Shown here: piece after piece, positions 8,844-62,929 of the stretch
Layout: each line of letters opens with the position of its first letter
Position numbering within the stretch: the first letter of the stretch is position 1
From: Mobula birostris
Lineage: Eukaryota
Assembly: GCF_030028105.1 (NCBI RefSeq)
Contig: NC_092383.1
Span: 85,889,921 to 85,953,920 of the forward strand
DNA: 64,000 nucleotides
Direction: 5' to 3'
The notes under the pieces: model-generated
What the model was told of the DNA's origin: nothing
Seen by the model: only the letters and a program-made list of their open reading frames with translations
Databases searched by the model: none
Translations under genes and position numbers: made by a program

Positions 8844-8864
8844 TTAACATCTTGACAATATCAT
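8844..8864 (-). CDS. Receptor terminal coding exon (MILSRC*), short cytoplasmic tail
   Basis: Acceptor ctatctgcag then ATGATATTGTCAAGATGTTAA. Phase 0 matches the TM exon end. The paralogue at 49030-49050 encodes the same peptide with a TGA stop. Confidence 0.7.
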   Translation of the reverse strand: MILSRC

Positions 8865-8978
8865 CTGCAGATAGCTTTGGATTGACCATTGGATAAGGAA
8901 AGGTAAATGTGTTTAAATGTCTTTCCTCAAATGAAAAGTATATTTGGAAGCAAATTCCACTAATGTCCATTAGCCTAC

Positions 8979-9069
8979 CTTAGTTTCTCTTGTGAACCAC
9001 ATGACTGAACTCGTGCCGATCATCAGGAGAGCGAAGAGTACCCAACGACCCACTTCCCATATCATGAAA
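8979..9069 (-). CDS. Transmembrane exon with Arg (activating-type): FMIWEVGRWVLFALLMIGTSSVMWFTRETK
   Basis: ctttgctcag acceptor and gtaggc donor, 91 bp, phase 2 to 0. Paralogue at 49165-49255 is the same length and open. Confidence 0.85.
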
Positions 9070-9138
9070 CTGAGCAAAGAGGAAGAGATACAGAATTGAT
9101 GAGATGAAATGAGATGGCTTTGTGTTTAAAATATGTAC

Positions 9139-9186
9139 CTCCTGTTTCCTTTGTGGAGTGTGTAATGTTGAATCAGGTTCGTGGGT
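9139..9186 (-). CDS. Stalk exon 2 (PTNLIQHYTLHKGNR)
   Basis: cacttgccag acceptor and gtacat donor, 48 bp, phase 2 to 2 and open. 69-bp intron to the TM exon, the same length as in the 49 kb paralogue. Confidence 0.65.
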
Positions 9187-10717
9187 CTGGCAAGTGAGAC
9201 AGAAAACACTGGCTGCAAATAAATATGTCAATCATTTTTTACAAACAATAAAAATTCTACCAAATATTCATGTTCCCAAGTTACAGAAACTACAAAGTTG
9301 AATCTACAAACACACTTAGCTAAAAGTGCATGCAATGCATACCTTCCCGATGGTTATGTGCACCACTTGCCTTAAACCAAGGAAAAGAGAGCAAGCCTCT
9401 TCCATGTGCTCTTTTATACCCAGGATATTTGACACTGGACACCAGGCTGCTAACCAATGGGAAAAGCAGCTGCAGTTGCTAAACTAACTAATCAGGATGA
9501 AAGTGACTTTTGACAATCAGAATAAGCCCCCCACAGGACACACTACCTCTTGAAAGTTGCAACACCCTGCGATCCAACCCTTGTGACGATGAGGATTACC
9601 TTTGTGAATTCCCTATTAAGTTACATACAAAACGCAGTACAATACAATAGTCGTCCCCCAGTACACGACAGTAGTCCACCAGCCTCCCTGTGCCCCAAAA
9701 GGCCACCAGCACCACCCCAGAGTGTGATAGCTAATGAGCTGCTTACTGAATTAACCAATCACAAAGGAAGCGACTTTCAACAATCAGAATAAGCCACGCC
9801 TGCCACTGGAGAGAGTGGAGCAAGGCAAATAACCAGAGCTAGAGCGGTTCATCTAGAAGAGTAAACTAATGTTAACTGAGGGTGTGGTGGGCAACTGATG
9901 ATCATCAGATACAGACCTAATCACTGGGGCTTGGTCTCGGACAAATTAGATCTTTGAATTAGAAACTGCAAAGTGAAAATGGGTTTAGGAATGATAGAGA
10001 AGTTAATAATGAATGGCCTCCATGATACTGAAATATCATCAAAAATCTGATCACATTATTCTCTGGACAACAGTAGATATAGGGAAATTACATTCAAAAA
10101 TTTCTGTAGGACTCACTCACAACAGAAGGTCTGAAATGCCAATAAGAGACTTTGTAAATTGAGGAAAGAATGGGGTAAATCAATCAGGGCAATGAAAATG
10201 ACCACAATAAAATGCAATTATGATGATCAAAAAGATGGAACCATGTAGGAATAATATCAAATAGTTTCAAGACAATGGCAACATCTTGCATTGCGGTCAT
10301 TCATTGATTCTATTATGGTTATTGTATTTACTGAGTATGCCCGCATGAAAATGAATCCCGGGGTTGTGTATGGTGATATATATATACTTGGATAATAAAT
10401 GGACTTTGAAATTTGAAATCGTTTCTTCAATTCATCCAGTTTATTAACATCTCTTCTTCAGCAGAGAACCAAAACTGAACATAATACTCCAAGTATCATC
10501 TCATCAATTGTCTTAAACAACTGCAACATCACCTTCCAACTTGTCTACTCTGGCTGATGCCTAAAGCCTTCTTCACTACTCTGTCTACCCCTGACTCCAC
10601 TTTCAGGGAACCATGTACCTGAGTCACAGTCAGTGTTTGTGAAGTGTCTGAGTGAGATCTTATTTCACCTCTCCATAGAAGGCTTCAGCACATGTTCTGG
10701 AAGATAGAATTTATATA

Positions 10718-11772: not shown

Positions 11773-11916
11773 GCCTCAACAGGTTGTGGATATTCGTATG
11801 AAGATAGCATCAGTAATGAGAACATTGTGTCTTTAAGCAGAACTGGATTAAGTGATTTACCTTGCAGTTGGTTCTACTGGAACATCTTCATACGAATATC
11901 CACAACCTGTTGAGGC
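11773..11916. repeat. Perfect 33-bp inverted repeat with 78-bp spacer overlapping stalk exon 1
   Basis: gcctcaacaggttgtggatattcgtatgaagat (11773-11805) is the exact reverse complement of 11884-11916. Confidence 0.95.
11861..11906 (-). CDS. Stalk exon 1 (CGYSYEDVPVEPTA)
   Basis: Strong acceptor ttttctttccttgcctcaacag and gtaaat donor. 46 bp, phase 1 to 2, bridging a phase-1 C2 exon to phase-2 stalk exon 2. Carries a Cys like the stalk exon at 55.7 kb. Confidence 0.7.
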
Positions 11917-14505: not shown

Positions 14506-14826
14506 CAGTGCTAGTGAATTGAATCACAAAGCTGCAATTGTCTCCTCTGTTGTAGATGGACATGTTCACTATTTCACTAGACTTTGCTCCATGAGTATTC
14601 GAGGCTGTGCAGTAATATTGATGGTGTTGGTGTTTGAAGGATTGGCAACATAGATCCAGTTTACTGGTGTCAGAGATCTTTGAATCCACTGATGAGATGT
14701 TTTCATACCATGCGTATTGAATGGGAAGGGATCCCTGGACAGACTCACAGGACACTGACACGGAGCTCCCACCACACGAGACATTTGCAGGAGACAGAAA
14801 TTGAAGCACAGGAACAGGCACCGGTT
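14506..14826 (-). pseudogene. Ig C2-type exon, open frame but 5' splice site mutated (GT to AT)
   Basis: EPVPVPVLQF..VSCESVQGSLPIQYAWYE..YYCTASN. Acceptor ttccacag is intact. The donor position reads ataagt where paralogues have gtaagt (19812-17, 59068-73). Confidence 0.85.
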
Positions 14827-15329
14827 CTGTGGAAAAGAATCAGTGAACATCAGAAAATCAATAAAGATTTCAGCAGCTCTGCATCTCAGCCAGGGCCTGC
14901 AGGTGGTTGTCTCACCTCTAAATCCATCTGTGTGTCTGCATCCTCCCAGATGCCTGAACCGCCACATCTGCCATTATCCCAAAACACAACAAGACTCTGG
15001 ATCAGGACAGCAGTGATGATACTGAGAATGTGATGTGTCAGTGTGAAAATCAGGGTGCAATCTCTCTCAGCAACAAGGAGACAGTCTCCAGTGGAGTTTT
15101 TAAAAAAATCAATGCAAATATTGTTTTAAGCTGAGAGGTGGGCAATTTAAAGGAGATTTGTGAGACAAGTTCTTTAGCTACAGTGGTGACTGACTGTCAG
15201 GTGAATAGGTGGAACAGATATAACAGCAATATTTAAAAGGCATTTAGACTAACCCACAAAAAGGTAGGCACTGGAATGATTATGGACAATTGCAGGCAGA
15301 TGGAATTAGCTTAGACTGACATCATAAGA

Positions 15330-15830
15330 TCATAGAACTATAAGACATAGGAGTAGAATCAGGCCATTAGGCCTATTGAGTTTGCACCGCCACTCAATAA
15401 TGTTGATATGTTTTCCCTCTCAAGCCCATTCTGCCTCCTTCTCCGTGAAACCTTTGATATCCTTACTAATCAAAAATCTATCAACCTCCACTTTAAATAT
15501 ACCCAATAACTTGTCTTCCACAGCCTTCTGTGGCAATGAAATCCACAGAATCATCACCCTCTGACTAAAGAAATTTCTCCTCTGCTGTGTTCAAAGAGAA
15601 TGTCCTTCTATTCTGAGTCTTTTTCATCCCAGTCTAGACTCTTCCACTGCTGGAAACATACTGTTCATGTCTACTCTATCTAGCCTTTCAATATGCTGTA
15701 CAATGCTGTAGGTTTTGATGAGATCCCATCTCATTCTTCTAAATTCTAGTGAGGAAAGGCTCAGTGCCATCCAACATAGCTCATATATTAACCCTTTCAG
15801 TTCAGGGAACATGTTCAGTGGAACCATGAT
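15330..15830 (-). mobile_element. CR1 3' end in the V-C2 intron
   Basis: EFRRMRWDLIKTY reading. A related CR1 end sits at the equivalent position of the 59-62 kb copy (59880-60330). Confidence 0.75.
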
Positions 15831-16251: not shown

Positions 16252-16566
16252 CGTCAGATATGTTTAGATACACGTCAAACACTGGATGATTTCGAGATAT
16301 TGTAATTCCATATCTGTAAATTCCTGTATCATTAGAGACAAGATTCTTGATAGTAACAGTAAATATTCCCTGGGATGTGTTATCTCTGATTGTCATTCTT
16401 CCATACTGCTCATTTTGCCCCTTTGTATTCTCTGACGATGTGCATCGGCGATCCCACATGCAGCACAAATACTTTGTGTGTGAATGGTACACTGGTGCAT
16501 AGTGACAATCGATTGTGACTGCTCTTCCCACAACTCCTCTTACTTTATCTTCTGCCCATAAAGCAC
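16252..16566 (-). CDS. Ig V-type (CD300/pIgR-like) exon, second canonical Cys replaced by Tyr; possibly non-functional
   Basis: 315 bp, phase 1-1, tttcag acceptor and gtaggt donor. GALWAEDKVRGVVGRAVTIDCHY..KYLCCMWDRRC..DTGIYRYG. Confidence 0.85.
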
Positions 16567-17039
16567 CTGAAACTGAGGGAGAAGTTATTCGGAAAATGGA
16601 CAGGTAAAGTCAAATTTACACAAGATTATTTAATGTCATTTCCTGTACACACGTGTAAGGGAGAACAAAATCATTGTTACTCTGGATCTGATGGAGAACA
16701 AAAAAGTAGAGCTTGGCACATGGAGATTAGCAAGAACTTTGAGAAAGTCTCACATAGTAGGCTGATCTGTAATGTGAGATCATATGGTAACCTAGCTGGA
16801 TGGATACTGAATAGGGTTGGTGGAAGGAGTCAGATTGTGGTAGTGGAGTGTTGGTTTTCTGACAACATCAGACTTTATCACGAGTGGTGTACCATTGAGA
16901 TCAGTGCTGTTATTTGTCATCAATATTGATAATTTGTAATGATAATGTAGGTGGCACAATTAATAAGTTACGGGTGACACTGTAGTGCGTTGGACAGTGG
17001 AAAGAGTGGTCGAAGTTCACAATGGGATCTGGTAACGAA

Positions 17040-19817: not shown

Positions 19818-20138
19818 TGGTGCCATTGATTTCTGTCATATAACTGCAGTTCTCTCCTTTGTTGAAGACTGTCACTGTAACTGTTCCCCTGTATTTTTCT
19901 CCAAAGCTATTTGAGGCTTTGCAGTAATAACAATGGTGCCGGTGGTCAAAGGATTGACAACCTAGAGTCAGTTCATTGCTACCTGAGACATTTGGACGCC
20001 CAGATGAGGTTATTTCATGCCATGTGTACTGAATGGGAAGGGATCCTTGGACAGACTCACAGGACACTGACACTGAGCCCACGAGACATGAGACATCTGC
20101 TGGTGACAGATATCGAATCACAGGGGCAGACACACGTT
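19818..20138 (-). CDS. Ig C2-type exon, intact
   Basis: 321 bp, phase 1-1, ttccacag acceptor and gtaagt donor. ERVSAPVIRY..VSCESVQGSLPIQYTWHE..YYCKASN..NCSYMTEINGT. Confidence 0.9.
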
Positions 20139-20588: not shown

Positions 20589-21998
20589 TGTCATGGTCTG
20601 GTCCGTGAAATCCGCATTCTGGTTCACGGTCCGGTCCATGTTCCTTATTCCAGGTTTTTCCGGTTTTCCCCAGTTTCTGTTGAGGCAGCTGATTCTCGTT
20701 TGGGCTGGCCTCATAAATAACTTCAGGATTCAGCCTCTGGTTGCTGGATTGTTCCTGTCCAACCTCCCTGTTTGAATCCCTTCCCCTCCCCTTCCTTTTG
20801 TTGCCTTGCCTTGCCTTGCCTTGCCTTGCCTTGCCTTGCCTTGCCTTGCCTTGCCTTGCCTCGCCTTGCCTTGCCTCGCCTTGCCTTGCCTCGCCTTGCC
20901 TTGCCTCGCCTCGCCTCAAGCCTCACCTGTAACCCTCGCCTGCACTGCTGTCAAGTTCCATTGCCAGAGCAAGATAAGGAACTGTCTATCATTGTTTTGA
21001 ACTCTCTCTGTGTCCTCACCTTCACTAGGTAGGTCTGGCCATTTGCAGCTACCTAGTGTTGGGAACTGTCTCTGTATCCATGCCTTTGCTAGGTAGGTCT
21101 GGCCGTTTGCCGCTACCTTGTGTTGGGAAACTGTCTCTCTGTGTTCTATGTACGAGTCCCGGCCCTACAACCTGCTCTCTAGGAGGGGTCCCGGCTCTGT
21201 GTTCCAGGTCTCTGCGTTCCTGTCTCTCCCTCGACCAAGGCTCTGCATTCCTGGCTTTCCCTCAACCAAGGCTCTGCGTTCCTGGCTTTCCCTCAACCAA
21301 GGCTCTGCGTTCCTGGCTCTCCCTCGACCAAGGCTCTGTGTTCCTGGGTCTGCGTTCCTGTCTCTCCCTTGACTAAGTCAAGGCTTCAGGGTCTCATCCA
21401 GTCCTAGCCACGTCCAAGAACCTTGTCCTGTCCAAGCCATGGCTTTGTGTTCTTGTCTTATCCATGTGTCTCACCCAGCCCAGTAGTACCTTGCCCAGCC
21501 TGGTGCTGGGGTTCCCTCGTCCTGTGCTGGGGTTCCCTTGTCCTGTCCAGGAGTCTCACGTCCAGTCCTATTGCCACTCCTCGTCCTGTAGCCACGTCTT
21601 GTCCTAGCCTAGTTCTGGAGTCCGAGCCCAAGTCAAGTCCCAGATTCTGGGTCCTTGCCCAGTTTCTGGCTTGGAGTCCATACCCAAGCCTCGTCATGTC
21701 CTCGCCTAGTTCCGGGGTCCGAGCCCAAGCCAAGACCCAGGTTCTGGCTCCTCGTCCAGTCTCTGGCTCGGAGTCCAAGCCCAGGCTCCTTGTTCCCAGC
21801 TCCATGTCCTGGTTCCGCTATCCTAGTCAAGTCCTAGCCTAGGCCCTTTATCCTTGTCTCATCCAGGGCCTGTGTCATGTCCAGCATTCTTTCTTCCCCA
21901 CTTCCCTTGCTTGCTTAACTCTAGTAGTAGTCCTGTTCCTGGTACTTCAGTGTCTGTGTCTTGTATTTGGGTCTGTTCCCTGCACCCACCTTATGACA
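20589..21998. mobile_element. Solo LTR (1410 bp) with 5-bp TSD
   Basis: Termini TGTCAT..ATGACA, flanked by agtat on both sides (20584-88 and 21999-22003). Internal short tandem repeats. Confidence 0.85.
20803..20916. repeat. (CCTTG/CCTCG)n pentanucleotide microsatellite
   Basis: More than 20 tandem pentamer units. Explains the ARQGK and LPCLA ORFs. Confidence 0.95.
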
Positions 21999-26700: not shown

Positions 26701-26954
26701 CCTACCTGAAATGGGCCCTGCTGGGGGGTTCCTGTGGTCAGCATGGACAGGCTGGGCGGAAAGGCCTTTATCCACGCTGTGTTGCTCTGTAACTCTACGA
26801 GATCGTTGTGAGTGCTGAACTGAACCACATGGAAACTGAACGTGTGAGATACGAAAGAAATTTATTCAACACAGCAGATCTAGAGAACCTACTTCTGCTC
26901 TCTTCAAACATCAGTACAGTGATGTTTCATACTTTGTAAACAAAAAGACGACAA

Positions 26955-29310: not shown

Positions 29311-29319
29311 TCTCCTTCT

Positions 29320-32770: not shown

Positions 32771-32888
32771 AATATATAATACAACAATAAGTCAAGGATG
32801 GAGAAATAAACAATGTAGATTGAAGTAAGCAATTTCCCTAAAAATCAACACAAGTTTCCTGTGCAGTACCAGGAGAGAAAGCTTTCTG

Positions 32889-33101
32889 TTAGGGGTTTGC
32901 GGGTTGGTTTTGAAATTTGATATCTGCATCGATAACGTTGTCCTCATCAGTAACGGAGTGTACTGCTCTTGATTACCTTTTATATTTCACGTCTGCATAC
33001 ACAATTCAATTTTCATTGTTAGCCAATTGGGCAGCTGCCTCAGCGTTTTGAACATGGTGTAGATCTGTATAAATGATATTTTCTTCCAACGTGGCTACTT
33101 C
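32889..33101 (-). pseudogene. Orphan ITIM-bearing cytoplasmic terminal exon of an inhibitory receptor
   Basis: Acceptor ttctttatttcag. Phase 0 reads EVATLEENIIYTDLHHVQNAEAAAQLANNEN*IVYADVKYKR*SRAVHSVTDEDNVIDADIKFQNQPANP*: two ITIM consensus motifs, a degenerate third, and 2 internal stops. Confidence 0.8.
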
Positions 33102-34312: not shown

Positions 34313-34627
34313 CGTCAGATACTTGTAGATGCACGTCATACACTGGATGATTGCCAGATGTTGTAATTCCACATCTGTAAAGTCCTGTATCATTAGAGAC
34401 AAGATTCTCCATAGTAACAGTAAATATTCCCTGGTATGTGTTATCTCTGATTGTCATTCCTCCATACTGCTCATTTGTCCCAATTGTATTCATTAACAAT
34501 GTGCATTGGCGATCCCACATGCGGCACAAATACTTTGTGTGTGAACGGTACATTGGTGCATAGTGACAATCGATTGTGATTGCTCTTCCCGCAACTCCTC
34601 TTACTTTATCTTCTGCCCATAAAGCAC
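34313..34627 (-). CDS. Ig V-type (CD300/pIgR-like) exon, intact
   Basis: 315 bp, phase 1-1, canonical splice sites. IDCHY..KYLCRMWDRQC..DTGLYRCG has both Ig Cys plus the CD300-type C-C' Cys pair. Confidence 0.92.
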
Positions 34628-35049
34628 CTGAAACTGAGGGAGAATTTTTTCAGAAAATGGATAGGTAAAATCAAATTCACTCAAGCAGATTCTAGATAGT
34701 TTAATGTCACTTCCAGGACCTAAGTGCAAAGGAGGACAAAATACTTGTTACTTTGGATAGAATGCTGCTCACAAAAATAAGCACAATTGATAAAGAACAC
34801 AATGTGAAAAGTTGTTTTATTTAAAGCTGTCACTGCATTCTAAGGAATCTACCCGCTGTCAATTGGTACAATTGAATTCCACATTAAACTTAGAAGACAA
34901 CAGCATTGTCCCTCATCACGTGCTCACAGCTCTTCATAAGTAATGATTTTTATTTGATTGGAGTCATCATTATCACTGCCTACTAATGTCTCGGTGTGTT
35001 TCTACATTTCTGAGTCAATAGATTACTGATCCAGTCCCATTCCAGGCAG

Positions 35050-48300: not shown

Positions 48301-48550
48301 AGGGGAAAGGTTTAGGGGGAACTTCTTCACTCAGAGAGTGGTGGGAGTGTGGAACGAGCTGCCATTTGACGTGGTGAATGCGGGCTCACTCTTAAGTTTT
48401 AAGAATAAATTGGATAGATACACGGATTGGAGAGGTCTGGAGGGTTATGGACTGGGTGCATGTCAATGGGACTAGCGGAATAAAGTTTTGGCACAGACTA
48501 GATGGGCCGAATGGCCTGTTTTCTGTGCTGTTGTGTTCTATAGTTCTATA
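42310..48550 (+). mobile_element. Second CR1 LINE (ORF1 zinc/coiled-coil plus SGNH esterase, ORF2), interrupted by L1
   Basis: DYTCKKCIQLQLL, IGDSIVRG..HAGTND, CIYFNAGSI, GVPQGSVLGPLLF..KFADNT, and 3' tail gttctatagttctatag. Confidence 0.9.
44146..46910 (-). mobile_element. 5'-truncated L1-clade LINE nested in CR1
   Basis: 415-aa ORF 45697-46944 with RT motifs (YRPISLLNVDAKI, SLDAEKEFDRVEW, LYADD) and C-terminal ORF 44476-45003. agttcct occurs at both ends. Confidence 0.9.
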
Positions 48551-49029
48551 GAGTAAAATAATCTTAAGCAGTTCACTGCCATGATAGGGTTAAAAATTGT
48601 TGCTTGTGCAATGAAAAGAAAACATTGTGAAAAGGTACCATATGATTGAGATCTGTGGAGGTGACATGTTGGAAATGGAATGCTAAAAAGAGTCAATGTC
48701 CTGAAGTATGGTAACATTATTTCTTCACCTTCATGAAGTTGATAATGAATGATAAGAGAAGTTAATTCTCCACAAATGTTAAATTTGCACAAATTCTGAA
48801 GAAGTATGAATATTTGATCTTGCTGCGAAATTCCAGCACAATCTGTGTGATCTAGAAGCCTTCAGTTTACCTTATAGACCAGTCTGGGAGGAGCTGATTC
48901 ATCCGGCTTCTGTAAAAGGCAATGGTCAGATCATCAGACTCATCGACACTGGAAACTCTGCTTTAGAGTTGTATCTGGAGCTTGGACTCCAATATATTCA
49001 CATCAAGCATTCTGCACACATACGGTGTG

Positions 49030-49164: not shown

Positions 49165-49255
49165 CTTAATTTCCCTTGTGAACCATGAGACTGAAATAGT
49201 GCAGATCAGCAGCAGAGTGAAGAGCAGCCAACGACCAACCTTCCATATCATGAAA
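49165..49255 (-). CDS. TM exon (second copy): FMIWKVGRWLLFTLLLICTISVSWFTREIK
   Basis: 91 bp, phase 2 to 0, canonical splice sites, open frame. Confidence 0.75.
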
Positions 49256-49669: not shown

Positions 49670-49850
49670 CATGTGTCATCTCTGATTATTATTCTTCCAT
49701 ATTGTTCACTTTGCCCATTTGTATTCACTAACAATGTGCTCTGGCGATCCTACATGTGGCACAAATACTTTGTGTGTGAACTGTATATTGGTGCATAGTG
49801 ACAATCGATTGTGATCACTCCTCTTATTTTATCTTCTGCCCATAAAGCAC
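49670..49850 (-). pseudogene. Truncated V-exon pseudogene
   Basis: Acceptor tttcag changed to ttttgg, 12-bp deletion, TGG to TAG stop, and the 3' half is deleted after ..IRDDT. Confidence 0.88.
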
Positions 49851-50924
49851 CCAAAACTGAGGGAGAAATTCTTCAGAAAATTTACAGGTAAAATCAAATT
49901 TACACAAGTAGATTCAAGATTGTTTAATGTCATTTCTTGTATACAAATGTAAAGGAGAACAAAATCATTGTTCCTCTGGATCTGAAGCAGCACAAAAACA
50001 AAAGAATGATAAAGAAAGCAACAATATTAATAAAAGATGTTTTATTTAAGGCCTCTTTTGCACATTGGACTTTTGTCGGACTTTGTTGTGTGTGGTTTGT
50101 CATGGATTCTATTGTGTTTCTTTCTTTCGTGCATGTGTGAAAGAAGATGAATCTCCAGGTTGTTATGGTGTACATACTTTGATAATAAGTTTACCCTGAA
50201 TTTTGAACTTGGAAAGCGGCTAATGGAATGACTGATGGAATTGAACTCAGGCAGTGTGAAATGATGAATTTTGGGAAATTGAACAAGGGCAAAACTTACA
50301 CAGTAGGGAACTAGGTATGCAACTACACAGGTACCTGAAAGTGGCAACACAGGCGGACAAAGTGCTGAACAAGGTATATGACCAGCTTGCCTTCATTGAA
50401 TGGGGCATTAAGTACAGTTGCAATGGCATGTTAGAGCTATAAAGGACATTGACAAGACCTCAACTTGACTACTCTGTGTAGTTCCATAGGAAGAGTTTGA
50501 TTAAATTAGAGAAGGTACAGAAAGCATTCACAAAGATGCTGCTGGGACTGGAGGGTTTGGGTTATGGACAGGCTCGGACAGTTTGAAACTTGGATGTGCA
50601 AGTTCAACTATGTTTGAAATGCTCCACATTTGAATGGAGTAAGTGACAGATTATAACATTGCATTAAGGTAGTACAAGGGGAAACAGTAAGAGAATGCAG
50701 AATAAAGTGTTACAGTTACAGAGAAAGTGCCATGCAGTAGGCAATAAGCTGCAAGCCCAGTTAGATTATAAGATCAAACACCCATTTTATCATACTATGA
50801 GAGCATGCAATAGTTTTGTAACAGTGAGAAAGAAGCTGTCCTTGAAGCTTGTGGTACATGCTTCCAGACTCTTGTAATTTCTGCCCAATAGGAGGGGAGA
50901 GGAAGAGAGTACGTCCGTGGCTAA

Positions 50925-53605: not shown

Positions 53606-55699
53606 GATAGTTGGGTCTTCAAGTTGATTGGCTGCTTTACCATGTCAGTGAAGAGTATTAAAATCGATTAAAAATATAAATTATTACAAATATCCATAAA
53701 GTATAATTATGTATGTATGAACACATGTGTATAACAATCAGGATGTGGGGAGAAGCTGAGGTAATATCTACAGATCCTTCTGCACTCACAGTAAAGGATC
53801 TAATAAAGGAAACACTGCATCTGCTTAAAACTAGCTCTCCTACAAAAGTCAACTCCCTCCAAATCCCACACTGGTTTGGACATTGATTGTTGAGTTCTCA
53901 CTGGTGTCATGTCAAAATCTTTTCTCCTCTGGACTGTGGAACATCTCCAACAGACCCAGCAGAAAGCCTGCAGTGAATGCAAGACCAAATGCTCTCAAAT
54001 TGGACCCTACAATTAGTGCTAATCAGGCATCCACTTAAGTAATACAAGTAACATGGAATTCCTGAGCCTATTAAGATAAGCTTAACAAGTTTAAACAGAA
54101 AGCACCAGGGTTCATATTACAAAGAGTGAGTCACTCAATAAATACCCAAGGATCTCGAAAGGATTAATGACTCTTGTCAAACTACAATTAAGTAATTCAG
54201 GTGCTCTAAAAACTTCGAAGCTCAATGGTCTCCGGCTCCCCACACAGGCACAATGAGCTCATTACAGACAGAAAGGATTAATGAGAGTAGGGCAGTGGAT
54301 GTTGTCCACATGAACCTTAGTAAGGCCTTTGACAAGGACCCAGATGTACATTACTCCAGAGGTTTAGATCAACATGGGATTCAGGATTCAGATTCAGGTA
54401 CCAAATTAAATATAACAGTGGCTTGGTGGAAGGAGTTAGCAGATTGTAGTGGGGTTTTTCAAATTGGAGGTATTGGATTTTAATAAGGTAAACCAGGGCA
54501 AGGCATACACAGTAAAATGGTAGGAGAATGTTCTAGAAAAGAGATCGAGGCTTCCAGGTACATTGTTACCTGAAAGTGGTGTCACAGGTAAACAGGGTAC
54601 TGAAAAAGGCATTTGGTACATTTACTTTGTTGTCCAGGATGGTGAGTACTGTACAAGATTATTATATGATGTTATGGCTGTATAAGATGTTAATGAGATA
54701 TCATTAGACTGGAAAGGGTGCCGCAGAAAAATCATGAGGAAAATCCTGAGAATGGAGGGCTAGAGTTATAATGGAGGGTTGGATAGGCTGAGACTTTTGT
54801 CCTGGAGCTTAGAATGCTGATGGGTCATTTAACAGAGGTATATAAAATCATGAGGGGCATCGATAAGGTGAATGATCACTGTCATTTTACAAGGGGAGGG
54901 GACAGTAAAGTGAGCAGGTCCAGGCTAAAATTGAGTAGGGAAAGGACCTAAGGAGCAACCTTATATACAGAGGGTCTTGGGTATATGGAACAAGCTGCCA
55001 CATCAATCCATAGAAATGGATACAGTTACAAAGGTTAAAAGACATTTTGACAGATATGTGAATAGGAAAGGCTTAGAACAGGGCCTCACAAACTTTTTTA
55101 TGCCCTGGACCTGACAATACATAATTCAGGCACTTCAGTTTATTAATGTGTAATTAATCTGTAAATTTCATTCTCACTTTCATAGGTTATTATGCATACT
55201 GCAGTGCTTTACACCTTGGTTTGGAGAAACATTGCCTCACTGGACAGTATACATGTATGTAGTTAAATGACAATAAACTTCACTTGACTGGACTGGACTG
55301 GACTTGACCCCAGGTTGGGAGCCCCTGGCAGAGAAGGATATGGAATAAATAAAATTAAATGTGCTCAACTTAGATGGACATCCTGGTTGGCTTGGACGAG
55401 TCAGGCTGAAGGGCCTGTTGATCTAATATATAACAAAGACATTACAATTCTATACATGAGCTTCAACTGCTATGCTTAAATTATTAAATAATTTGGGAAA
55501 ATAAATTTATCTTTGATCTCAGGCTTGACACATGTTCAACAAAATCAGGAATGCTCAGTTTCCAAGATATGAGTTTGTTGAAGTTAATCATGTCAAATAT
55601 GATAAACACTAGTTAAAGAGAAACAAATTTCTCTCCCAACTGGTTCTACTTGGAAGCAGTAGCAGTGAAACCACCTGCAGAGAAAACCTTATACTTTAC

Positions 55700-55778
55700 A
55701 TTTGAGCTGAAGTAGTTTCTTCCCTTTGTGCAGTTGTCATCAATTCTGTCACAGTCTTTTCACAGAAATCAATTGGCC
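55700..55778 (-). CDS. Stalk exon (GPIDFCEKTVTELMTTAQREETTSAQ) of the 59-62 kb copy
   Basis: Very strong acceptor ttttattttattttcttttaacag and gtaaag donor. 79 bp, phase 1 to 2, Thr/Glu-rich with a Cys, in unique sequence. Confidence 0.7.
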
Positions 55779-56074
55779 CTGTTAAAAGAAAATAAAATAA
55801 AATTTCATCTGCATTGTACTTGCAAGAACAAGAGATCACAATTGTTAGACCAATAGGTACTTGAGCATGGAGGACCAAAGGTGATCTATTACCTGATGAA
55901 CACTTAAAGGTTAAAGATGAGATTTATTTGTCTCATGTACATCAGATCATACAGTGAAATACATTGTTGACAACAGTGACCAACAGCGTTTGTGGTGGGG
56001 GCAGCCTGCAAGTGTTCCATGCTTCTCGCACCAAAATGGCTTCCTCAGGATTTACTCATCCTAACCTGAATTGA

Positions 56075-56720
56075 GTCAGTAGTGAAGAAGGCGAATGCAA
56101 TGTTGGCATTCATTTCTAGAGGAATAGAGTATAGGAGCAGGGATGTGATGTTGAGGCTCTATAAGGCGCTGGTGAGACCTCACTTGGAGTACTGTGGGCA
56201 GTTTTGGTCTCCTTATTTAAGAAAGGATGTGCTGACGTTGGAGAGGGTGGAGAGAAGATTCACTAGAATGATTCCGGGAATGAGAGGGTTAACATATGAG
56301 GAACGTTTGTCCGCTCTTGGACTGTATTCCTTGGAGCTTAGAAGAATGAGGGGAGACCTCATAGAAACATTTCGAATGTTAAAAGGCATGGACAGAGTGG
56401 ATGTGGCAAAGTTGTTTCCCATGATGGGGGAGTCTAGTACGAGAGGGCATGACTTCAGGATTGAAGGGCGCCCTTTCAGAAACTTTTTTAGTCAGAGGGT
56501 GGTGAATCTATGGAATTTGTTGCCACGGGCAACAGTGGAGGCCAAGTCATTGGGTGTATTTAAGGCAGAGATTGATAGGTATCTGAGTAGCCAGGGCATC
56601 AAAGGTTATGGTGAGAAGGCGGGGCAGTGGGACTAAATAGGATAAAATGGATCAGCTCATGATAAAATGGCGGAGCAGATTCGATGGGCCGAATGGCCTA
56701 CTTCTGCTCCTTTGTCTTAT
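56075..56720 (+). mobile_element. Young CR1 3' end
   Basis: Uninterrupted 184-aa ORF 56082-56636 (LYKALVRPHLEYC..ELRRMRGDLIETF). Confidence 0.9.
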
Positions 56721-58199
56721 GGTCTAACCTGTGCATCTCTGGAACATGGGAGGAAACTGTGGCACCCGGAGGAAACCCATGCAGTCACTGGGAGAACGTA
56801 CAAACAACTTGCAAACAGTGGTGGGAATTGGACCCTGATCACTGATCACTGATGCTGTAATACTGTTACAGTAATTGCTGTGCTCCTGTGCAACCTATTA
56901 CATTTACTGGCAATTTGGATACAAGGAGATAATGGTTCAAGTACACTTTTTATCCAACAGGATAATGCAGGAGGTTTTCTCAATGAAAAAGCAAGGTCAC
57001 TTTTTTCTCATGTCTCTTGATGTCTCAACCTCTGAGAAAAATAACTCAATCTTTCTTGAATACAGGTTCACCACATTCTGGGAGAAGAAATCTTTCCTAA
57101 TCCCAGTCTTAAGTGTCTCACCCCTCAGATTATTTCGAAGATTCCAAGCTTACTTACTTACTGTCCGTTACACCACTGGTGTTTAGGGCAGCAATGAAGG
57201 TCTCCTATCTCTGGCAGTGTTCGGGGCTTCCTTCATTGTGTCAATAGATTCCTCTCGGTTTTCACTGCTGTCAGTCATGCAAGTCCCAGGTAGAGACTGA
57301 GCAATACCATCAAACTCTGATGGAAAAGGATTTTTCATTCCTGTTTCCATGACAATTTTGTTTAACCAGTCAGGCCTGTCAGTCCTGAGTGAATCCCCCA
57401 AATCTGGAGGATTGGGGGACCACTCTAAGTCTGGCCTCTACCCTTTGACCTCTTTGGCATGGGTGACCTGATGAACAGCCAAAGCATAAAGCCCTCACTC
57501 CAGCCAACGTAGCTCTCTGGGTCATTGAGGCATGCAAACCTCCAAATCTAACAAGTTTGTGGTTCTCTCGTGGTAAGACTCCATAGACTATCCTGTATCC
57601 CCTGGCACTGGAAGCATCCTACCTGCATCTGTATTACCCTGTTAAAATATTGCTCATTTCTATGTGATCACCTCTCAGCCTGCTGAACTCCATCAAATAA
57701 ACCCAATCAACCAAATCTCTGATCTTGTGTCAATTGTGGCATTCCAGAAATCAGTCTGGTGATCCTTTGCTTGCCTTCTTTCTTAACAAGAACATCTTTC
57801 ATTGAACCAAATCTGCTGACAATGCTGGTGGCCCAAGAGTGAGGCTCGAGTTAATGTTTGACCGATTTAAGCTTCAGGCCAGAAAGGAAAGATCGGGTAT
57901 GGGCCAAATCGAGGCGGTGAGTCCCGGGCACAAGAGCGTGTCAAAACAGCAAGAGCCCCTACCATCCAAGCCATGCTCTCTTCTTGCTGCTGTCGGTACA
58001 AAGGAGTTGCAGGGGGCTTAGATCCCGTATCACCAGGTTCTGGACCAGTTAATATCTTCAACCTGTAGGCTCCTGAAACATCATGGATAAATTCACTCAC
58101 CAACACTGAACTGATTCTGCAACCAATGGACTCACTTTCAAGGATTCTACAGTTCATCTTCTCAGCATATATTTATTTATTTATTTATTTATTTATCTC

Positions 58200-58585
58200 C
58201 TTTACCTTTCCCCATTCCCCTTTCCCTCTCTCACCATTCTGCAAACCTGCCCATGACCTCCCCCTGGTGCTCCTCCACTTTCCCTGCTTTCCATGGCCTT
58301 CTGTCCCCTCCTGTCAGATTTCCCCTTCTCCAGCCCTTTATCGCTTTCATCTTTACTTCACCCCTCCCACTCTCTTGATTTCACCTATCACCTATTACCT
58401 TGTACTTCTCCATCTCCTCCCACTGACTTTCTTACTTTGACTTCTAATCTGCTTTTCTTTCCAGTCCTGATGAAGGGTCTCAGCCCGAAATGATGACTGA
58501 TGTCTCTTTTCAGTAGATGTTGCCTGGCCTTCTGAGTACCTCCAGAAATTTGTGTGTAGTGCTTCCAGCATCTGCAGGTATTCTC
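58200..58585 (+). mobile_element. Penelope terminal-repeat fragment
   Basis: Pyrimidine-rich segment, then cctgatgaagggtctcagcccgaaatg and ccagcatctgcag. Confidence 0.65.
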
Positions 58586-59073
58586 TTGTTAATTATTTAT
58601 CTATTATTTGTTTCTTTTGTATTTGCACAATTTGTCTTATTTTGCACATTGATTGTTTGACATTTTTGATTGTGTGTAGTTTTACATTGAGTCTGTTGTA
58701 TTCATTTGTATCTACTGTGAATGCCTGCAAGAAAATGGATCTCGGGGTAGTATATGGTGACAAAAACGTAATTTATTTTCAACTTTGAAGTGGTTTAACT
58801 TGGAAGAACTATATTAATGAATGGCCAGAAATATTACCAGATGAGACACATTCACACCCAGCCAGCGAGAGTCAGATCAGAGACAGGAGACCCTGTGCTG
58901 AGAGACTCACATTTGAATGGCTGTGCCGAAAAGCTTTTCATTCTCTGAAACATGGTGACAACATACACTTAATGCTGCTGAGTGAAGTTCCAACAACACA
59001 ATATCCAGCACACATCAGTCATTCAGTTGTACTCCATCGACCATCATAAAGATTCAAACCCTCCAGCACTTAC

Positions 59074-59391
59074 CCGTACTGTTGACTTCAATCACATTTC
59101 TGCAGGTGATGACACTGTTGGAGATGGACACACTGACCATTCCACTGGACTTTGTTCCATTAACATTTGAGGCATTGCAATAATACATATGATTGCTGTA
59201 TTTTATGGATTGGCAATGTAGATCCAGTTTATTTGTGTCAGAGATCTTTGAATCCTCAGATGGCGTCTTTTCATACCATGAGTACTGAATGGGAAGGGAT
59301 CCATGGACAGACTCACAGGACACTGACACGGAGTCCCCACAACTTGAGCCACTTGGTGGTGAAAATCGAAGCAAAGGAACAGACACGGGTT
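59074..59391 (-). CDS. Ig C2-type exon, intact
   Basis: 318 bp, phase 1-1, ttccacag acceptor and gtaagt donor. EPVSVPLLRF..VSCESVHGSLPIQYSWYE..YYCNASN. Confidence 0.9.
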
Positions 59392-60359
59392 CTGTGGAAA
59401 ATAATCAGTGAACATCTGAAAATCAAACACACTAAACATTTCAGCAATTCTGTATCTCAACCGGGAGCCACCAGTTTGGAATCTCAGCAGCTCATCTACT
59501 CCACAGTGTCTCGTCATCCTCGCAGCTGCCAGAACATCCATGTCTGTCAGTATCACCGAAAACAGCAGGACTCCTGATCAGAACAACAGTGGTGACACAG
59601 AGTGTGTCAGTGTGAAAATCAGGACTTCAGTCTCTCTCAGCAGTGGGGAAACACTCTAAAGTGAGACCAAACAGTTTGACTCTGGAATGGCAGCATTGGT
59701 GGATGTTCTGGAAAACTCTCCATAGGTTGAAAGCAGGAAATTGTCAGATACATACAAAATGAATGGTGACTTTAAGGAGAGAGTGATTGGTTTCAGTAAC
59801 CTACAGCAGGAAGGGAATCTATTGGTATTGATATTGACATGAAGCCAACAAGGAATCAGGTGAGACCTGAGAACCAGAAAGACGATAAATCATAAGACCA
59901 TCAGACATAGGAGCAGAATTAGGCCATTCAGTCCATTCATGCTGCTCTACCATTCAATCATCGCTGATTTATTGCTCCTCTTCATATATTCTCCTGCCTT
60001 CTCTCTGTAACCATTGATGCCCTTACTTATCAAGAACCTATCAACTCTCCCTTAAATATACCCAAGGATTTAGCCTCCACAGCTTCCTGTGGAATTGAAT
60101 TCCACAGATTCACCAGCCTCTGGCTAAATAAATTACTCCTCATCTCTCTTTTAAAGAGATGTCCGTCTATTCTGAGTCTGTGCCCTTTGGTCCTAGAGGT
60201 CCACACTATAGGAAATATCCTCTCCACAACCACCAGGCATTTCAATGCTGGATAATTTTCCATGAAATCCACCCCCATTCTTCTAAATTCCTGCAAGGAC
60301 AGGCCCAGAAACTTCAAACGCTCCTCATACATTAGGGGAGTTTGACATCACCTGGACTT

Positions 60360-60655
60360 TATGAGGGGGTGACTGATAATTTTGTGGCCTAAGGTAGAAG
60401 GAGTCAATTAGAAAAGCTAGCACATTTATTTTCAACATAGTCCCCTCCTACATTTACACACTTAGTCCAGCGGTCATGGAGCATACGGATCCGTTCTTTG
60501 TAGAAGTCGGCGTCTTGGACCTCCAGAAAGTGGTCCACAGCAGGGTTGATTGATAAGTTCATGGCCTAAGGTAGAAGGAGATGAGTTGTACAGCTCTCGT
60601 TACATGCACATGTAGTTCAACTCTTTGAGTGATTATGCAGAAAGTTAATTACTCA
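60360..60655. mobile_element. Non-autonomous mariner-like element (uninterrupted copy)
   Basis: Matches the two halves at 26955-27022 and 29068-29310. Confidence 0.6.
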
Positions 60656-61693
60656 TTTCCAGGATTGAAGTGTATTAGCTATGGGTTGAAGTTCAACAAA
60701 CCAGAATTGTTTTTGCTGGTGTACAGGAGAGACCTGTGAGAAGTTTATAAAATAATTGAAGTCATATGTAGGGAAAATAGTCATAACCTTTTTCCCAGGG
60801 TTGAAATATCAAATAATAGTGAATATAGTTTTAAGGTGATCTGGGGGAAAGTTTAAAGGACATTTGTAAGACAAGTTTTTTTACAAGTTTTTTTTACACT
60901 AAGAGTGGTGACCCTATGAAACACACAGTCAGACTGGCTGTAAGAAAGGGATATCATAACAATATTTAAGAGGCTTTTAGATGAGGACATGAAAAAGGAG
61001 AGATTGGAGGGATATGGACCATATGCAATATGATGGAATGAGCTTAGAATGACATCATGATCAGTGCAGACATGCTGGGCCAAAGAGTCTATTCTTGGTC
61101 TGGAATGTGTGCTAAGTTCCCTCTAGTTCCATTGCTCCATTTCTCACAGCAATGGGTCAGATGGAGAGTCTGGCTGCCAGGAAGTGGATAGTCAATGGGT
61201 GTTGAGAGGTGGATTACTGGAGCACATTGAGGGGGACAGAGAGAAAGAGCACATGGTAGGGGAGGGAGTGAGTGATACTTGAAGCAGGGATCGGAAGTGG
61301 GATAGCCTGTCCTGGGAGGAATGAACACAGGCTGTTTTCATCTGGATTTGATTGCCTTTTTATGATTTTTGAGGTATTTAGATCATGAGTAACACTTGTT
61401 TCTCATTGACCTGTTATTATCAGATTATTAGATTTAGTCTGAATGTAAACTTCTGAGAGTGTGACATTTCATACAGTTCAGAGGCAGGAAAATGTGCCGA
61501 GCATCCCACTGGAAAACAGTGTCCAGTCAGTGGGTGAGAGCTATATGAGCGGGGTGTCCCGGCCCTCACCCGCTCCCTGTGAGATTCTGTACCTCTACAG
61601 AGCCTCAGGATGTCGGTGCTGCCCTACGCATTCCCAGAGAAAATATGAATCAGACAATTTGGTGGAGACACCGTCAATCAAGGAGAAACCTAC

Positions 61694-61991
61694 CGTCAGA
61701 TATGTGTAGATACACGTCAAACATTGGACATTCCACATCTGTAAATTCCTGTATCTTGAGAGACAAGATTCTCCATAGTAACAGAAACTATTCCCTGGGA
61801 TGTGTAATCTCTGATTGTCCTTCTTCCATACTGCTCATTTTTCCCATTTGTAATTACTAATGATACGCATAGGAGACCCCACATGCGGCACAAATACTTT
61901 GTGTGTGAACGGTACATTGGTGCATAGTGACAATCAATTGCGATCGCTCTTCCCACAACTCCTCTTACATTATCTTCTGCCCATAAAGCAC
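61694..61991 (-). pseudogene. Ig V-type exon with a 17-bp frameshifting deletion near the 3' end
   Basis: 298 bp versus 315 bp in paralogues. Reads ..DTGIYRCGMSNV*. Splice sites are canonical. Confidence 0.88.
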
Positions 61992-62929
61992 CTGAAACTG
62001 AGGGAGAAATTCTTCAAAAAATGGAAAGGTAAAAGCAAATTTACAGAAGCAGATTAAAGATTATTTTGTGTCATTTCCAGCACACGAGTGTAAAGGAGAA
62101 CAAAAAAAAATTGTTACTCCAGATCCAATGCAGCACCAAGAAGACAGAAATGATAAAGAACGTGATAATAATGAATAAGGATATTTTATTGAAAGCTGTT
62201 ACTGTGTTCTAAGGAAACAGCCCACACTGTCTATGGGTATAATTGAATTCCAGGGAAACTGAGAAGACAACAGCATCGTTCCTCATTACATACTCAGAGC
62301 TCTTCACAAGTTATTTGATTGGAGTCAACATTGTCACTGCCCACTAATGTCTCAGTGTGTTTCCACATTTCTGAGTCAGTCCCAATCCAGGCAGGTGAGG
62401 AAAAGATCAGTGGGGGGGGGGTAACTTACTGGAGGCAATTGTGTGAGACAGGATTTGCCTGAATTTGTAAAGACAAGATCTGATTTGGGATAGCCGACAT
62501 GATTTTGTGCATGAAAGAACCTCTCTGAAATGAAATTGACTGAGTTTTTTTGAAAGGCTGACCAAAGGGACTGATGAGAGTAAGGAGTTTAGCAAGGCTT
62601 TTGACAGGGTCTCACATTGTAGACTGATCTGCAATGTGAGATCACATGGGATGCTAGCTGGATCGATACTGAATAAGCTTGGTGGAACTAGTTAGCTTGG
62701 TAGTGGAGTGTTGTTTTTTTGACAATATTAGACTTCTTCACCAGTTGAGTGCTGCTGGGATCAGTATTCTTATTTATTAACCAGTTACTTTCACCTATAT
62801 CGATAATTTGTAACAATATTGTAGGTGTCATGATTAATAATTTGTGGACGTCACAGTAATGTAGTGGACAGTGAAAAGAGTTGTTGAATTTTACAACTGG
62901 ATCTGGAAAATGAAAAAGTGTTCAGTCCC

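What the first reader, a model, noticed from the sequence alone, without database searches (positions are those of the whole stretch)
8844..62000. Tandem cluster of V-C2 CD300/pIgR-like (MDIR-like) paired immune receptors undergoing birth and death
Seen in sequence: 4 V exons, 3 C2 exons, 3 stalks, 2 Arg-TM plus short-tail pairs, 1 ITIM exon and 1 leader, all on the minus strand. Each local copy has lost exons or carries lesions. Established knowledge: V domains with a second C-C' Cys pair and DTGxYxC are CD300/pIgR/TREM-type, and skates have MDIRs with activating and inhibitory forms. Inference: this is a non-rearranging paired-receptor complex made of about five decayed paralogues.
Basis: partly seen in the sequence, partly recalled or inferred. 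Interest (0 to 1): 0.7.

Follow-up and report, generated by a model that had tools for sequence, protein, structure and literature searches.

The report
Decayed ray MDIR immune-receptor gene remnants
This stretch of ray DNA holds broken, front-less leftovers of three or four genes of the MDIR family of paired "on/off" innate immune receptors, known from skates since 2006.

Summary
The exons are real, and all lie on the minus strand: 4 V, 3 C2, 2 stalk, 2 Arg-transmembrane, 2 short-tail and 1 ITIM exon. A third stalk and a leader could not be confirmed.

The family is the skate MDIR family. Named MDIR2, MDIR3 and MDIR5 proteins are direct homologues (V 62%, last C2 64-67% identity). The V domain is closest to pIgR D1 and CD300f. 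The C2 domain is closest to FCRL5.

- **Gene plan.** The family's plan is leader-V1-C2a-V2-C2b-stalk-TM. All four V exons here are the internal V2 type, never leader-proximal in 62 relatives. The window has no leader, no V1 exon and no inhibitory TM exon, so no copy is complete.
- **Number of copies.** I count three to four remnants, not five. Exons at 62.0-48.9 kb are colinear and in frame with a Mobula birostris activating gene model (P0173).

Lesions are a 17-bp deletion, a truncated V with a stop, a Cys-to-Tyr change, a GT-to-AT splice donor and two stops in the ITIM tail. RNA contigs showed only paralogue transcripts.

One extra observation: V exons differ at 1-6% of silent sites, against 20-24% in flanking introns, with dN/dS of 2-8. 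This suggests exon-limited gene conversion.

The scan already found intact MDIR genes in eight other windows of this genome, 0.33-1.44 Mb away.

The parts
61694..61997 (-). V2-type V exon (V61). It is 304 nt because of a 17-bp deletion near 61730, which shifts the frame in the FG loop and gives a stop four codons later. Splice sites are intact.
   Evidence: V tree (end branch 0.31).
59074..59391 (-). Membrane-proximal C2b exon (C59), 318 nt. The reading frame is intact, with an AG acceptor and a GTAAGT donor.
   Evidence: In the C2 tree it sits in a 99% clade with the last C2 of P0010, P0163 and P0173. It is 87% identical to Mobula P0152 and P0232.
55700..55778 (-). Stalk exon (GPIDFCEKTVTELMTTAQ...), 79 nt, phase 1 in and phase 2 out, with good splice sites.
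   Evidence: It matches the stalk of M. birostris P0173 at 16 of 18 residues.
49672..49856 (-). 5' half of a V2 exon (V49). It has a 12-bp deletion and a TGG-to-TAG stop near 49752-49750. It is cut off at 49672 and joined to intron DNA homologous to 10270-10472, upstream of the other TM exon.
49165..49255 (-). Arg-containing transmembrane exon (FMIWKVGRWLLF...), 91 nt, phase 2 in and phase 0 out, intact.
   Evidence: It matches M. birostris P0173, P0257 and P0259 at 30 of 31 residues.
48862..48909 (-). Short cytoplasmic tail exon (KPDESAPPRLVYKVN, then a stop), intact.
34313..34633 (-). V2-type V exon (V34), 321 nt. It is fully intact: all four cysteines, acceptor and donor are present.
   Evidence: End branch 0.069 and 89% identity to M. 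hypostoma P0184 V2.
32856..33101 (-). ITIM tail exon. The first ITIM (IIYTDL) is intact. In-frame stops follow at 33008-33006 and 32975-32973, and the third tyrosine motif has changed from Y to D.
   Evidence: It is 72% identical to the P0184 tail.
19818..20138 (-). Membrane-distal C2a exon (C20), 321 nt. The frame and splice sites are intact, but the branch is long (0.39).
   Evidence: C2 tree.
16252..16572 (-). V2-type V exon (V16), 321 nt. The frame is open, but the canonical F-strand Cys is Tyr (TAT at 16312-16310, YRYG).
   Evidence: end branch 0.28.
14506..14826 (-). Membrane-proximal C2b exon of the activating type (C14), 321 nt. The frame is open, but the splice donor is ATAAGT instead of GTAAGT.
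   Evidence: In the C2 tree it groups with the last C2 of the Arg-TM receptors P0096, P0195, P0198 and P0190.
11861..11906 (-). Activating-type stalk exon, 46 nt (GCGYSYEDVPVEPTAS against the family's GREYSCETFTTVSTVS). The conserved Cys is replaced.
8979..9069 (-). Arg-containing transmembrane exon (FMIWEVGRWVLF...), 91 nt, intact.
   Evidence: 81% identical to M. birostris P0201.
8676..8723 (-). Short cytoplasmic tail exon (KPDESDLHRLVYKVK, then a stop), intact.

Best explanation
The window is a decayed, retroelement-riddled edge of a myliobatiform ray's MDIR gene cluster. Earlier scan notes call the genome Mobula birostris. MDIR stands for modular domain immune-type receptor.

MDIRs are germline-encoded, non-rearranging type I membrane receptors. 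They are built from alternating pIgR/CD300-type V domains and FcR-like C2 domains. Each ends either in an Arg-bearing transmembrane segment with a short tail or in a plain transmembrane segment with ITIM tails. By analogy (inferred), the first kind pairs with an ITAM adaptor and activates, and the second recruits phosphatases and inhibits.

The window holds only back halves of such genes:
1. **62.0-48.9 kb.** V2, C2b, stalk, a half pseudo-V2 in the intron, Arg-TM and tail. This is colinear and in frame with the M. birostris activating gene model P0173, but its V2 carries a 17-bp frameshift.
2. **34.6-32.9 kb.** An intact V2 joined by a deletion to an ITIM exon that holds two stops. The TM exon is missing.
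3. **20.1-8.7 kb.** C2a, V2, C2b, stalk, Arg-TM and tail, with a Cys-to-Tyr change, a dead splice donor and a changed stalk.

No copy has a leader or a V1 exon inside the window. The copies arose by tandem duplication and were disabled by deletions, LINE insertions and point lesions (birth and death). Their V2 exons appear to have been kept alike by exon-limited gene conversion.
For: - **Family.** Named skate MDIR3, MDIR5 and MDIR2 are among the homologues of the nearest ray proteins. They hit the window's V, C2, Arg-TM and ITIM exons directly: V 62%, last C2 64-67%, E 1e-30 to 1e-35.
- **Domain types.** The V exon's best solved relatives are pIgR D1 and CD300f, with the C-C' cysteines aligned. 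The C2 exon's best is FCRL5.
- **Architecture of relatives.** It is (V-C2)n with n of 1 to 4.
- **V type.** All four window V exons fall in a 99% clade of internal V domains, next to a clade that holds skate MDIR3 V342 and MDIR5 V233. None of 62 leader-proximal V domains is of this type.
- **C2 subtypes.** They match the TM type that follows each.
- **Missing exons.** There is no leader, V1 or inhibitory TM exon.
- **Lesions.**
- **Deletion junctions.** Taken from self-alignment.
- **The P0173 match.** Stalk 16 of 18, TM 30 of 31, tail 12 of 15, with compatible phases.
- **Retroelements between exons.**
- **RNA.** Only contigs 4-10% different, that is paralogue transcripts, lie on the C59 exon.
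- **No RSS.**
- **V exon substitution rates.** dS is 0.006-0.07, against 0.20-0.24 mismatches in flanking introns (Fisher p 1.6e-5 to 5e-3). For the C2 exons dS is 0.45-0.49.
Against: - Several exons are individually intact, with short tree branches (V34 0.069, C59 0.078, C14 0.093). Part of the locus could therefore still be used.
- The 5' exons of the 62-49 kb unit could lie beyond position 64000, which I could not read.
- The RNA test used four small runs kept as contigs, which cannot show absence.
- Single-base lesions (Cys to Tyr, GT to AT) rest on the assembly alone.
- The gene-conversion inference rests on three or four short exons within one window.
- The adaptor and phosphatase mechanisms are by analogy with mammalian paired receptors and were not tested.
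Confidence: 0.85

Rival explanations
1. At least one live gene. Exons at 62.0-48.9 kb would be the 3' part of a functional P0173-like activating MDIR, whose leader, V1 and C2a lie just beyond position 64000. The frameshifted V2 exon (phase 1 at both ends) would be skipped, as in the natural V2-less model P0257.
For: - C59, stalk55, RTM49 and tail49 are intact, colinear and in frame.
- They closely match P0173 and P0257: TM 30 of 31, stalk 16 of 18.
- P0257 shows a V1-C2b-stalk-TM form.
- C59 has a short branch.
Against: - V61 keeps both splice sites, so it would normally be included and shift the frame.
- No RNA contig on C59 has this locus's own letters. Every contig there differs at six or more fixed positions.
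- A half pseudo-V and LINE pieces fill the 6.4-kb stalk-to-TM intron.
- The 5' exons are unseen.
Confidence: 0.18
2. One reading: about five independent two-domain V-C2 paralogues, each separately decayed.
For: - Local V-then-C2 order occurs at 62-59 kb and 16.5-14.8 kb.
- V-C2 forms exist in the family, for example skate MDIR2 and P0079.
Against: - In V-C2 family members the V is the leader-proximal V1 type. All four local V exons are the internal V2 type.
- C20 is the C2a type, which precedes a V2.
- The 55.7 kb stalk and the 49.2 kb TM match one annotated gene layout.
Confidence: 0.1
3. The exons belong to another Ig family: a true pIgR or CD300 orthologue, FcRL, CEACAM or NITR.
For: - RefSeq pipelines name the relatives pIgR-like, FcRL5, CMRF35-like or A33-like.
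- C2's best solved match is FCRL5.
Against: - Per-domain similarity to pIgR, CD300 and FCRL5 is only about 20-58 bits. Similarity to named MDIRs is 104-136 bits.
- The alternating V and C2 build, the Arg-TM exon and the ITIM tail match MDIR2, MDIR3 and MDIR5 end to end.
Confidence: 0.03
4. An assembly artefact, such as collapsed or duplicated haplotigs or chimeric joins.
For: The region is repeat-rich, and the copies resemble one another.
Against: - The copies are only 72-91% alike in DNA, far below haplotype level.
- Four DNA runs hold 82-84% of the 31-mers of 32850-34650, although they come from one sample, which may be the assembly's source.
Confidence: 0.02

Closest known systems
Skate modular domain immune-type receptors (MDIR1-5; Cannon et al. 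2006, Immunogenetics 58:362, cited in PMC3031540; UniRef-named MDIR2, MDIR3 and MDIR5 of Rostroraja eglanteria)
   Same: - The same two domain kinds alternate: a pIgR/CD300-like V and an FcR-like C2.
- The same Arg-TM motif (WKVGRWLLF in MDIR5) and the same ITIM tails (MDIR2, MDIR3).
- V is 62% and the last C2 64-67% identical to MDIR3 and MDIR5.
- The window's V exons lie next to the clade that holds MDIR3 V342 and MDIR5 V233.
   Different: - These are genomic remnants in a stingray or manta lineage, not expressed cDNAs.
- No copy is complete in the window.
- Leader, V1 and inhibitory TM exons are missing.
- Lesions are present.
RefSeq gene models of Mobula birostris and M. hypostoma, Hemitrygon akajei and Hypanus sabinus named 'polymeric immunoglobulin receptor-like' or 'Fc receptor-like protein 5' (for example P0173, P0163, P0184, P0195, P0201, P0010)
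   Same: - Exon-for-exon layout.
- Exon sizes of 321 nt for V and 318-321 nt for C2, with phase 1 at both ends.
- 80-89% identity in Ig exons and 97% in one TM exon.
   Different: - No listed model is encoded by this window. The best exon identity is 97% over 31 residues, and 89% or less for Ig exons.
- The window's copies are truncated and damaged paralogues.
Mammalian CD300 (CMRF35-like) family and pIgR domain 1
   Same: - The V fold type has a second C-C' disulfide and the DxGxYxC motif.
- CD300f scores 57.8 bits and pIgR D1 41.8 bits.
- CD300 is also a paired activating/inhibitory family with charged-TM and ITIM members (established knowledge).
   Different: - CD300 has a single V and no C2.
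- pIgR has only V-type domains and binds polymeric Ig.
- Identity is only about 35-40%.
- Neither has an alternating V-C2 build.
Paired receptor clusters that evolve by birth and death with gene conversion (KIR, LILR, SIRP and Ly49 in mammals; NITR in teleosts)
   Same: - A tandem same-strand cluster with activating and inhibitory forms that share similar ectodomain exons.
- Pseudogenes and hybrid genes.
- Ectodomain exons more alike than their introns, with an excess of replacement changes.
   Different: - A different domain family and lineage.
- Conversion is inferred here from one window only.
- Ligands are unknown.

Membership tests
MDIR (modular domain immune-type receptors of cartilaginous fish) | Significant end-to-end sequence similarity to the named skate MDIR proteins | tested here: met
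   - MDIR3, MDIR5 and MDIR2 hit the nearest ray protein P0010 at E 1.4e-234, 8e-173 and 2e-106.
- They hit the window's own exons at E 1e-24 to 1e-35.
MDIR (modular domain immune-type receptors of cartilaginous fish) | Ectodomain built from modules of two Ig subfamilies (CD300/pIgR/TREM-like and FcR-like) in variable number | tested here: met
   - Relatives are (V-C2)n with n of 1 to 4.
- The window holds 4 V and 3 C2 exons, each with phase 1 at both ends (V 321 nt when whole; C2 318-321 nt).
MDIR (modular domain immune-type receptors of cartilaginous fish) | Activating forms with a positively charged TM residue and inhibitory forms with cytoplasmic ITIMs | tested here: met
   - There are two Arg-TM exons.
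- There is one ITIM exon with IIYTDL and IVYADV.
- Signalling itself was not tested.
MDIR (modular domain immune-type receptors of cartilaginous fish) | Complete, expressible gene (leader through tail) | tested here: not met
   - There is no leader, V1 or inhibitory TM exon in the window.
- Lesions are present.
- No own-locus RNA was seen.
- The copies are therefore filed as remnants or pseudogenes of the family.
MDIR (modular domain immune-type receptors of cartilaginous fish) | Large multigene cluster | tested here: inconclusive
   - All family members of each ray species sit on one chromosome-sized contig.
- Earlier scan notes place intact genes 0.33-1.44 Mb away.
- I did not read that DNA.
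CD300 / CMRF35-like molecules | V domain with canonical plus C-C' disulfide | tested here: met
   The alignment to CD300f and pIgR D1 keeps all four cysteines.
CD300 / CMRF35-like molecules | Single V ectodomain followed directly by stalk and TM | tested here: not met
   V exons are followed by C2 exons, and relatives are multi-domain.
Polymeric Ig receptor | Tandem V-type domains only, with a long cytoplasmic sorting tail | tested here: not met
   C2 domains alternate with V domains. Tails are a 15-residue stub or carry ITIMs.
FcR-like (FCRL) | Ectodomain of C2-type domains only | tested here: not met
   The C2 exons resemble FCRL5 domains at only 12-21 bits per domain, and V-set exons are present.
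Rearranging antigen receptors (Ig/TCR/NAR) | V segment ending in an RSS, with a separate J | tested here: not met
   The G strand is inside the V exon, which ends in a GT donor. There is no RSS near any V exon.

The most novel reading that the evidence does not exclude
The dead V2 exons may not be inert. Their silent-site divergence (1-6%) is four- to fifteen-fold below that of their own introns (20-24%) and of the neighbouring C2 exons (45-49%), while replacement changes run at 11-13% (dN/dS 2-8).

This would mean that V2 exons across activating, inhibitory and pseudogene copies exchange sequence by exon-limited gene conversion. It would also mean that the ligand-binding domain is under diversifying selection. 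Pseudo-exons would then serve as a donor or partner pool for an innate, germline receptor family in a cartilaginous fish.

A smaller variant of this reading is that the 62-49 kb unit is a live hybrid activating gene.
Probability: 0.3. Interest if true: 0.5.

Novelty: new member of a known kind. Interest (0 to 1): 0.27.

Why it matters
On its own it matters little. It adds pseudogenes and gene fragments to a receptor family described in skates in 2006 and already annotated, under misleading pIgR-like and FcRL5 names, in several ray genomes.

It is useful in three modest ways:
- It shows what the decaying edge of an elasmobranch paired-receptor cluster looks like: deletions that join a V exon to tail exons, LINE invasion, and a colinear hybrid unit.
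- It warns annotators that lone intact V2 exons here are not single-V genes.
- It gives a small but clean signal that V2 exons evolve in concert and by amino-acid replacement. If this holds across the 1.5-Mb cluster, the KIR/LILR-style evolutionary mode of paired receptors would reach back to cartilaginous fish.

Tried and rejected
- **Leader search.** I tried the family motif and then any Met followed by a hydrophobic run on the minus strand. Nothing family-like turned up.
- **Inhibitory TM and juxtamembrane exons.** I used 35 homologous segments at E up to 20, then motifs. Nothing was found.
- **Third stalk exon.** A motif scan found none.
- **Apparent extension of C2b homology past 14506.** This is only alignment run-on through stop codons.
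- **Match of the P0096 tail to 39829-39734 and 24638-24546.** This is a repeated element, not a receptor exon.
- **RNA evidence.** Two run searches and one laying of four RNA-like runs on 55690-61689 gave only retroelement coverage and paralogue-derived contigs. This is neither support for nor proof against expression. The 6000-letter limit kept stalk55 and RTM49 out of one stretch.
- **DNA of M. birostris paralogues.** I wanted it for exon-versus-intron comparison. One protein was not on record and the other had no DNA served.
- **Original MDIR paper and a review by the same group.** Neither is held. What I say of the abstract is from memory and from PMC3031540.
- **A V34-to-ITIM33 splice.** It would be out of frame (phase 1 into phase 0) and there is no leader. 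I did not pursue the 'secreted decoy' idea noted elsewhere.

Full report
**What is there**

The window is vertebrate DNA, about 40% G+C, full of LINE and Penelope-like retroelement ORFs.

Taking the six Ig-like ORFs as queries, tblastn within the window finds four V loci and three C2 loci, all on the minus strand and with no others. Self-alignment shows these lie in duplicated blocks 72-87% alike.

Exact exon limits come from splice sites shared between copies:
- V: 61997-61694, 49856-49672, 34633-34313 and 16572-16252.
- C2: 59391-59074, 20138-19818 and 14826-14506.
- Stalk: 55778-55700 and 11906-11861.
- Arg-TM: 49255-49165 and 9069-8979.
- Tail: 48909-48862 and 8723-8676.
- ITIM exon: from 33101.

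Intact V exons are 321 nt and C2 exons 318-321 nt. All have phase 1 at both ends.

**Family**

- **Pfam.** It calls the V exons V-set, above threshold. The C2 exons score as Ig_3, Ig_2 or C17orf99-Ig, below threshold.
- **Solved structures.** The V exon is nearest to pIgR domain 1 and CD300f, then other CD300s, TREM2, FcμR (listed as Fas apoptotic inhibitory molecule 3) and NKp44 (listed as NK cell activating receptor). The canonical cysteines and the extra C-C' pair all align. The C2 exon is nearest to FCRL5 domains.
- **Exhaustive profile-free search.** A search with the intact V exon gave 2031 relatives. The best are multi-domain proteins of stingrays, mantas, sawfish, skates and sharks.
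- **Named MDIRs.** A search with the closest full-length one (P0010) returned skate 'Modular domain immune-type receptor' 3, 5 and 2 at E 1e-234, 8e-173 and 2e-106.
- **Direct hits on the window.** These three proteins hit the window's exons: V34 is 62% identical to the third V of MDIR3. C14 and C59 are 64-67% identical to the last C2 of MDIR3 and MDIR5. The Arg-TM exons match the MDIR5 TM, and the ITIM exon matches the MDIR2 tail.

**Gene plan and what is missing**

Relatives are built as leader, then (V-C2) repeated one to four times, then stalk, TM and tail.

A V-domain tree puts all four window V exons in a 99%-supported clade. That clade holds only internal V domains of stingrays and mantas. 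Its neighbour is a clade of skate internal V domains that includes MDIR3 V342 and MDIR5 V233.

Among 62 leader-proximal V domains in 267 fetched proteins, none is of this V2 type. All 56 V2-type domains are internal.

The C2 tree gives three placements:
- C20 is the membrane-distal C2a type.
- C14 groups with the last C2 of Arg-TM receptors.
- C59 sits in a 99% clade of last C2 domains shared by ITIM receptors (P0010, P0163) and Arg-TM receptors (P0173).

The window has no family-type leader, no V1 exon, and no inhibitory TM or juxtamembrane exon. No copy can therefore be complete inside the window.

**The remnants**

1. **62.0-48.9 kb.**
   - V61 has a 17-bp deletion that shifts the frame after YRCG.
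   - C59, the stalk at 55.7 kb, the Arg-TM exon and the tail are intact.
   - Their phases fit: 1 to 1, 1 to 2, 2 to 0, then 0.
   - Their order and sequence match the 3' end of M. birostris models P0173 and P0257: stalk 16 of 18, TM 30 of 31, tail 12 of 15.
   - In the 6.4-kb stalk-to-TM intron lie LINE pieces and half a V2 exon. That half-exon has a 12-bp deletion and a TAG stop. It is cut at 49672 and joined to DNA homologous to the pre-TM intron of the third remnant.
2. **34.6-32.9 kb.**
   - V34 is fully intact.
   - About 1 kb of V2-C2b-type intron follows (homologous to 60655-61677). The ITIM exon then begins within about 190 bp.
   - In the ITIM exon the first ITIM survives. Two in-frame stops follow, and the third tyrosine is lost.
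   - The closest model is the conserved inhibitory gene P0184/P0186/P0187, whose plan is V1-C2a-V2-stalk-TM-ITIM. Its stalk, TM and juxtamembrane exons are absent here.
3. **20.1-8.7 kb.**
   - The order is C2a, V2, C2b, stalk, Arg-TM, tail, like P0195 and P0201.
   - V16 has Tyr in place of the F-strand Cys.
   - C14 has an AT in place of the GT donor.
   - The conserved Cys of the stalk is replaced.

**Expression**

DNA runs of one sample hold 82-84% of the 31-mers of 32850-34650. RNA-like runs of the same and a sister organism hold about 10% of the words of 55690-62000.

When those runs were laid on 55690-61689, the coverage turned out to be retroelement tails. On the C59 exon, every contig differed from the window at fixed positions (4-10% different). 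Paralogues are therefore transcribed, but this copy was not seen. Contigs cannot prove silence.

**Mode of evolution**

| Comparison | Result |
|---|---|
| V exons, DNA identity (gapless columns) | 89-91% |
| V flanking introns, identity | about 76-80% |
| V exons, silent-site divergence | 0.006-0.07 |
| V flanking introns, mismatch | 0.20-0.24 (Fisher p 1.6e-5 to 5e-3) |
| V exons, replacement divergence | 0.11-0.13 |
| V16 against V34 | 1 silent and 27 replacement changes (binomial p 0.008); dN/dS 4-20 by four methods |
| C2 exons, dS | 0.45-0.49; dN/dS about 0.6-0.8 |

The change in identity at the V exon borders is sharp.

The simplest reading is that short-tract gene conversion keeps V2 exons alike across activating, inhibitory and dead copies. 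The differences between them would then be mostly replacements inherited from, or selected in, working genes. This is inference from one window. I could not obtain DNA of the intact paralogues.

**Mechanism, marked by basis**

- *Shown:* domain types, TM arginine, ITIM motifs, germline-joined V exons, no RSS.
- *Inferred from mammalian paired receptors:* the Arg-TM forms signal through an acidic-TM ITAM adaptor. The ITIM forms signal through SH2 phosphatases.
- *For this window:* the most likely state is non-functional remnants (0.85), with an 18% chance that the 62-49 kb unit is still a gene.

**Context and novelty**

Earlier notes of this scan, which I did not re-test, name the genome Mobula birostris. 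They describe intact MDIR genes in eight windows 0.33-1.44 Mb beyond this one.

My trees agree that Mobula proteins are the nearest for most exons. No listed protein is encoded here.

In the held literature the family is mentioned only in a carp SITR paper that cites the 2006 description.

The finding is sound but ordinary: new, decayed members of a known family.

Noticed in passing
window 11773-11805 and 11884-11916: A perfect 33-bp inverted duplication. One arm covers the acceptor and the first 23 nt of the 46-nt stalk exon (blastn-short, 100% over 33 nt).
   Followed up: partly
window 16252-16572, 34313-34633, 61694-61997 and flanks: V2 exons are far more alike than their introns, with sharp borders at the exon edges. 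Silent sites differ by 1-6% against 20-24% in introns, and dN/dS is 2-8. The neighbouring C2 exons show no such effect (dS 0.45-0.49).
   Followed up: yes
window 59079-59392 (RNA-like runs X19, X23, X25, X26): Contigs 90-96% identical to the C59 exon are present in runs of two related organisms. Some stop near the exon borders. Closer, transcribed paralogues of this exon therefore exist elsewhere in the genome.
   Followed up: partly
window 6096-6384, 7857-8271, 15320-15812, 23324-23862, 25435-25691, 36748-37334, 53091-53606, 56079-56727, 59885-60329: A LINE 3'-end repeat is present in at least nine copies on both strands. It encodes ...RFTRMIPGM..LGLYSLE.RRMRGDLIE... It is extremely abundant in the RNA-like contigs, with summed depth up to 1e5.
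   Followed up: partly
window 37936-38634 (+), 39882-44157 (+), 45697-46944 (-), 47217-48475 (+), 50966-53136 (+), 26185-30182 (-): Retroelement debris lies between the receptor exons.
- A GIY-YIG (Penelope-like) ORF.
- Two diverged tandem copies of a LINE 5' part with esterase and endonuclease domains (39946-41065 against 42835-43940, 65% alike).
- Several reverse-transcriptase ORFs (RVT_1, E 1e-38).
   Followed up: partly
window 20801-21781: A G+C-rich block of satellites just upstream of the C2a exon. It holds (TTGCC)x23 and arrays of 64-, 31-, 21-, 97- and 50-bp units. Local G+C is 0.50 and the strand skew is strong.
   Followed up: no
window 39734-39829 and 24546-24638; 57152-57278: The C-terminal 32 residues of the M. 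hypostoma model P0096 and the N-terminal 42 residues of the Hypanus model P0005 match repeated, non-receptor DNA here. Some RefSeq models of this family therefore seem to include repeat-derived or intronic sequence.
   Followed up: no
proteins P0163 and P0173 (M. birostris, not in the window): An ITIM receptor and an Arg-TM receptor share nearly identical leader-V1-C2a parts and the same C2b clade. This looks like a textbook activating/inhibitory pair with a shared ectodomain.
   Followed up: no
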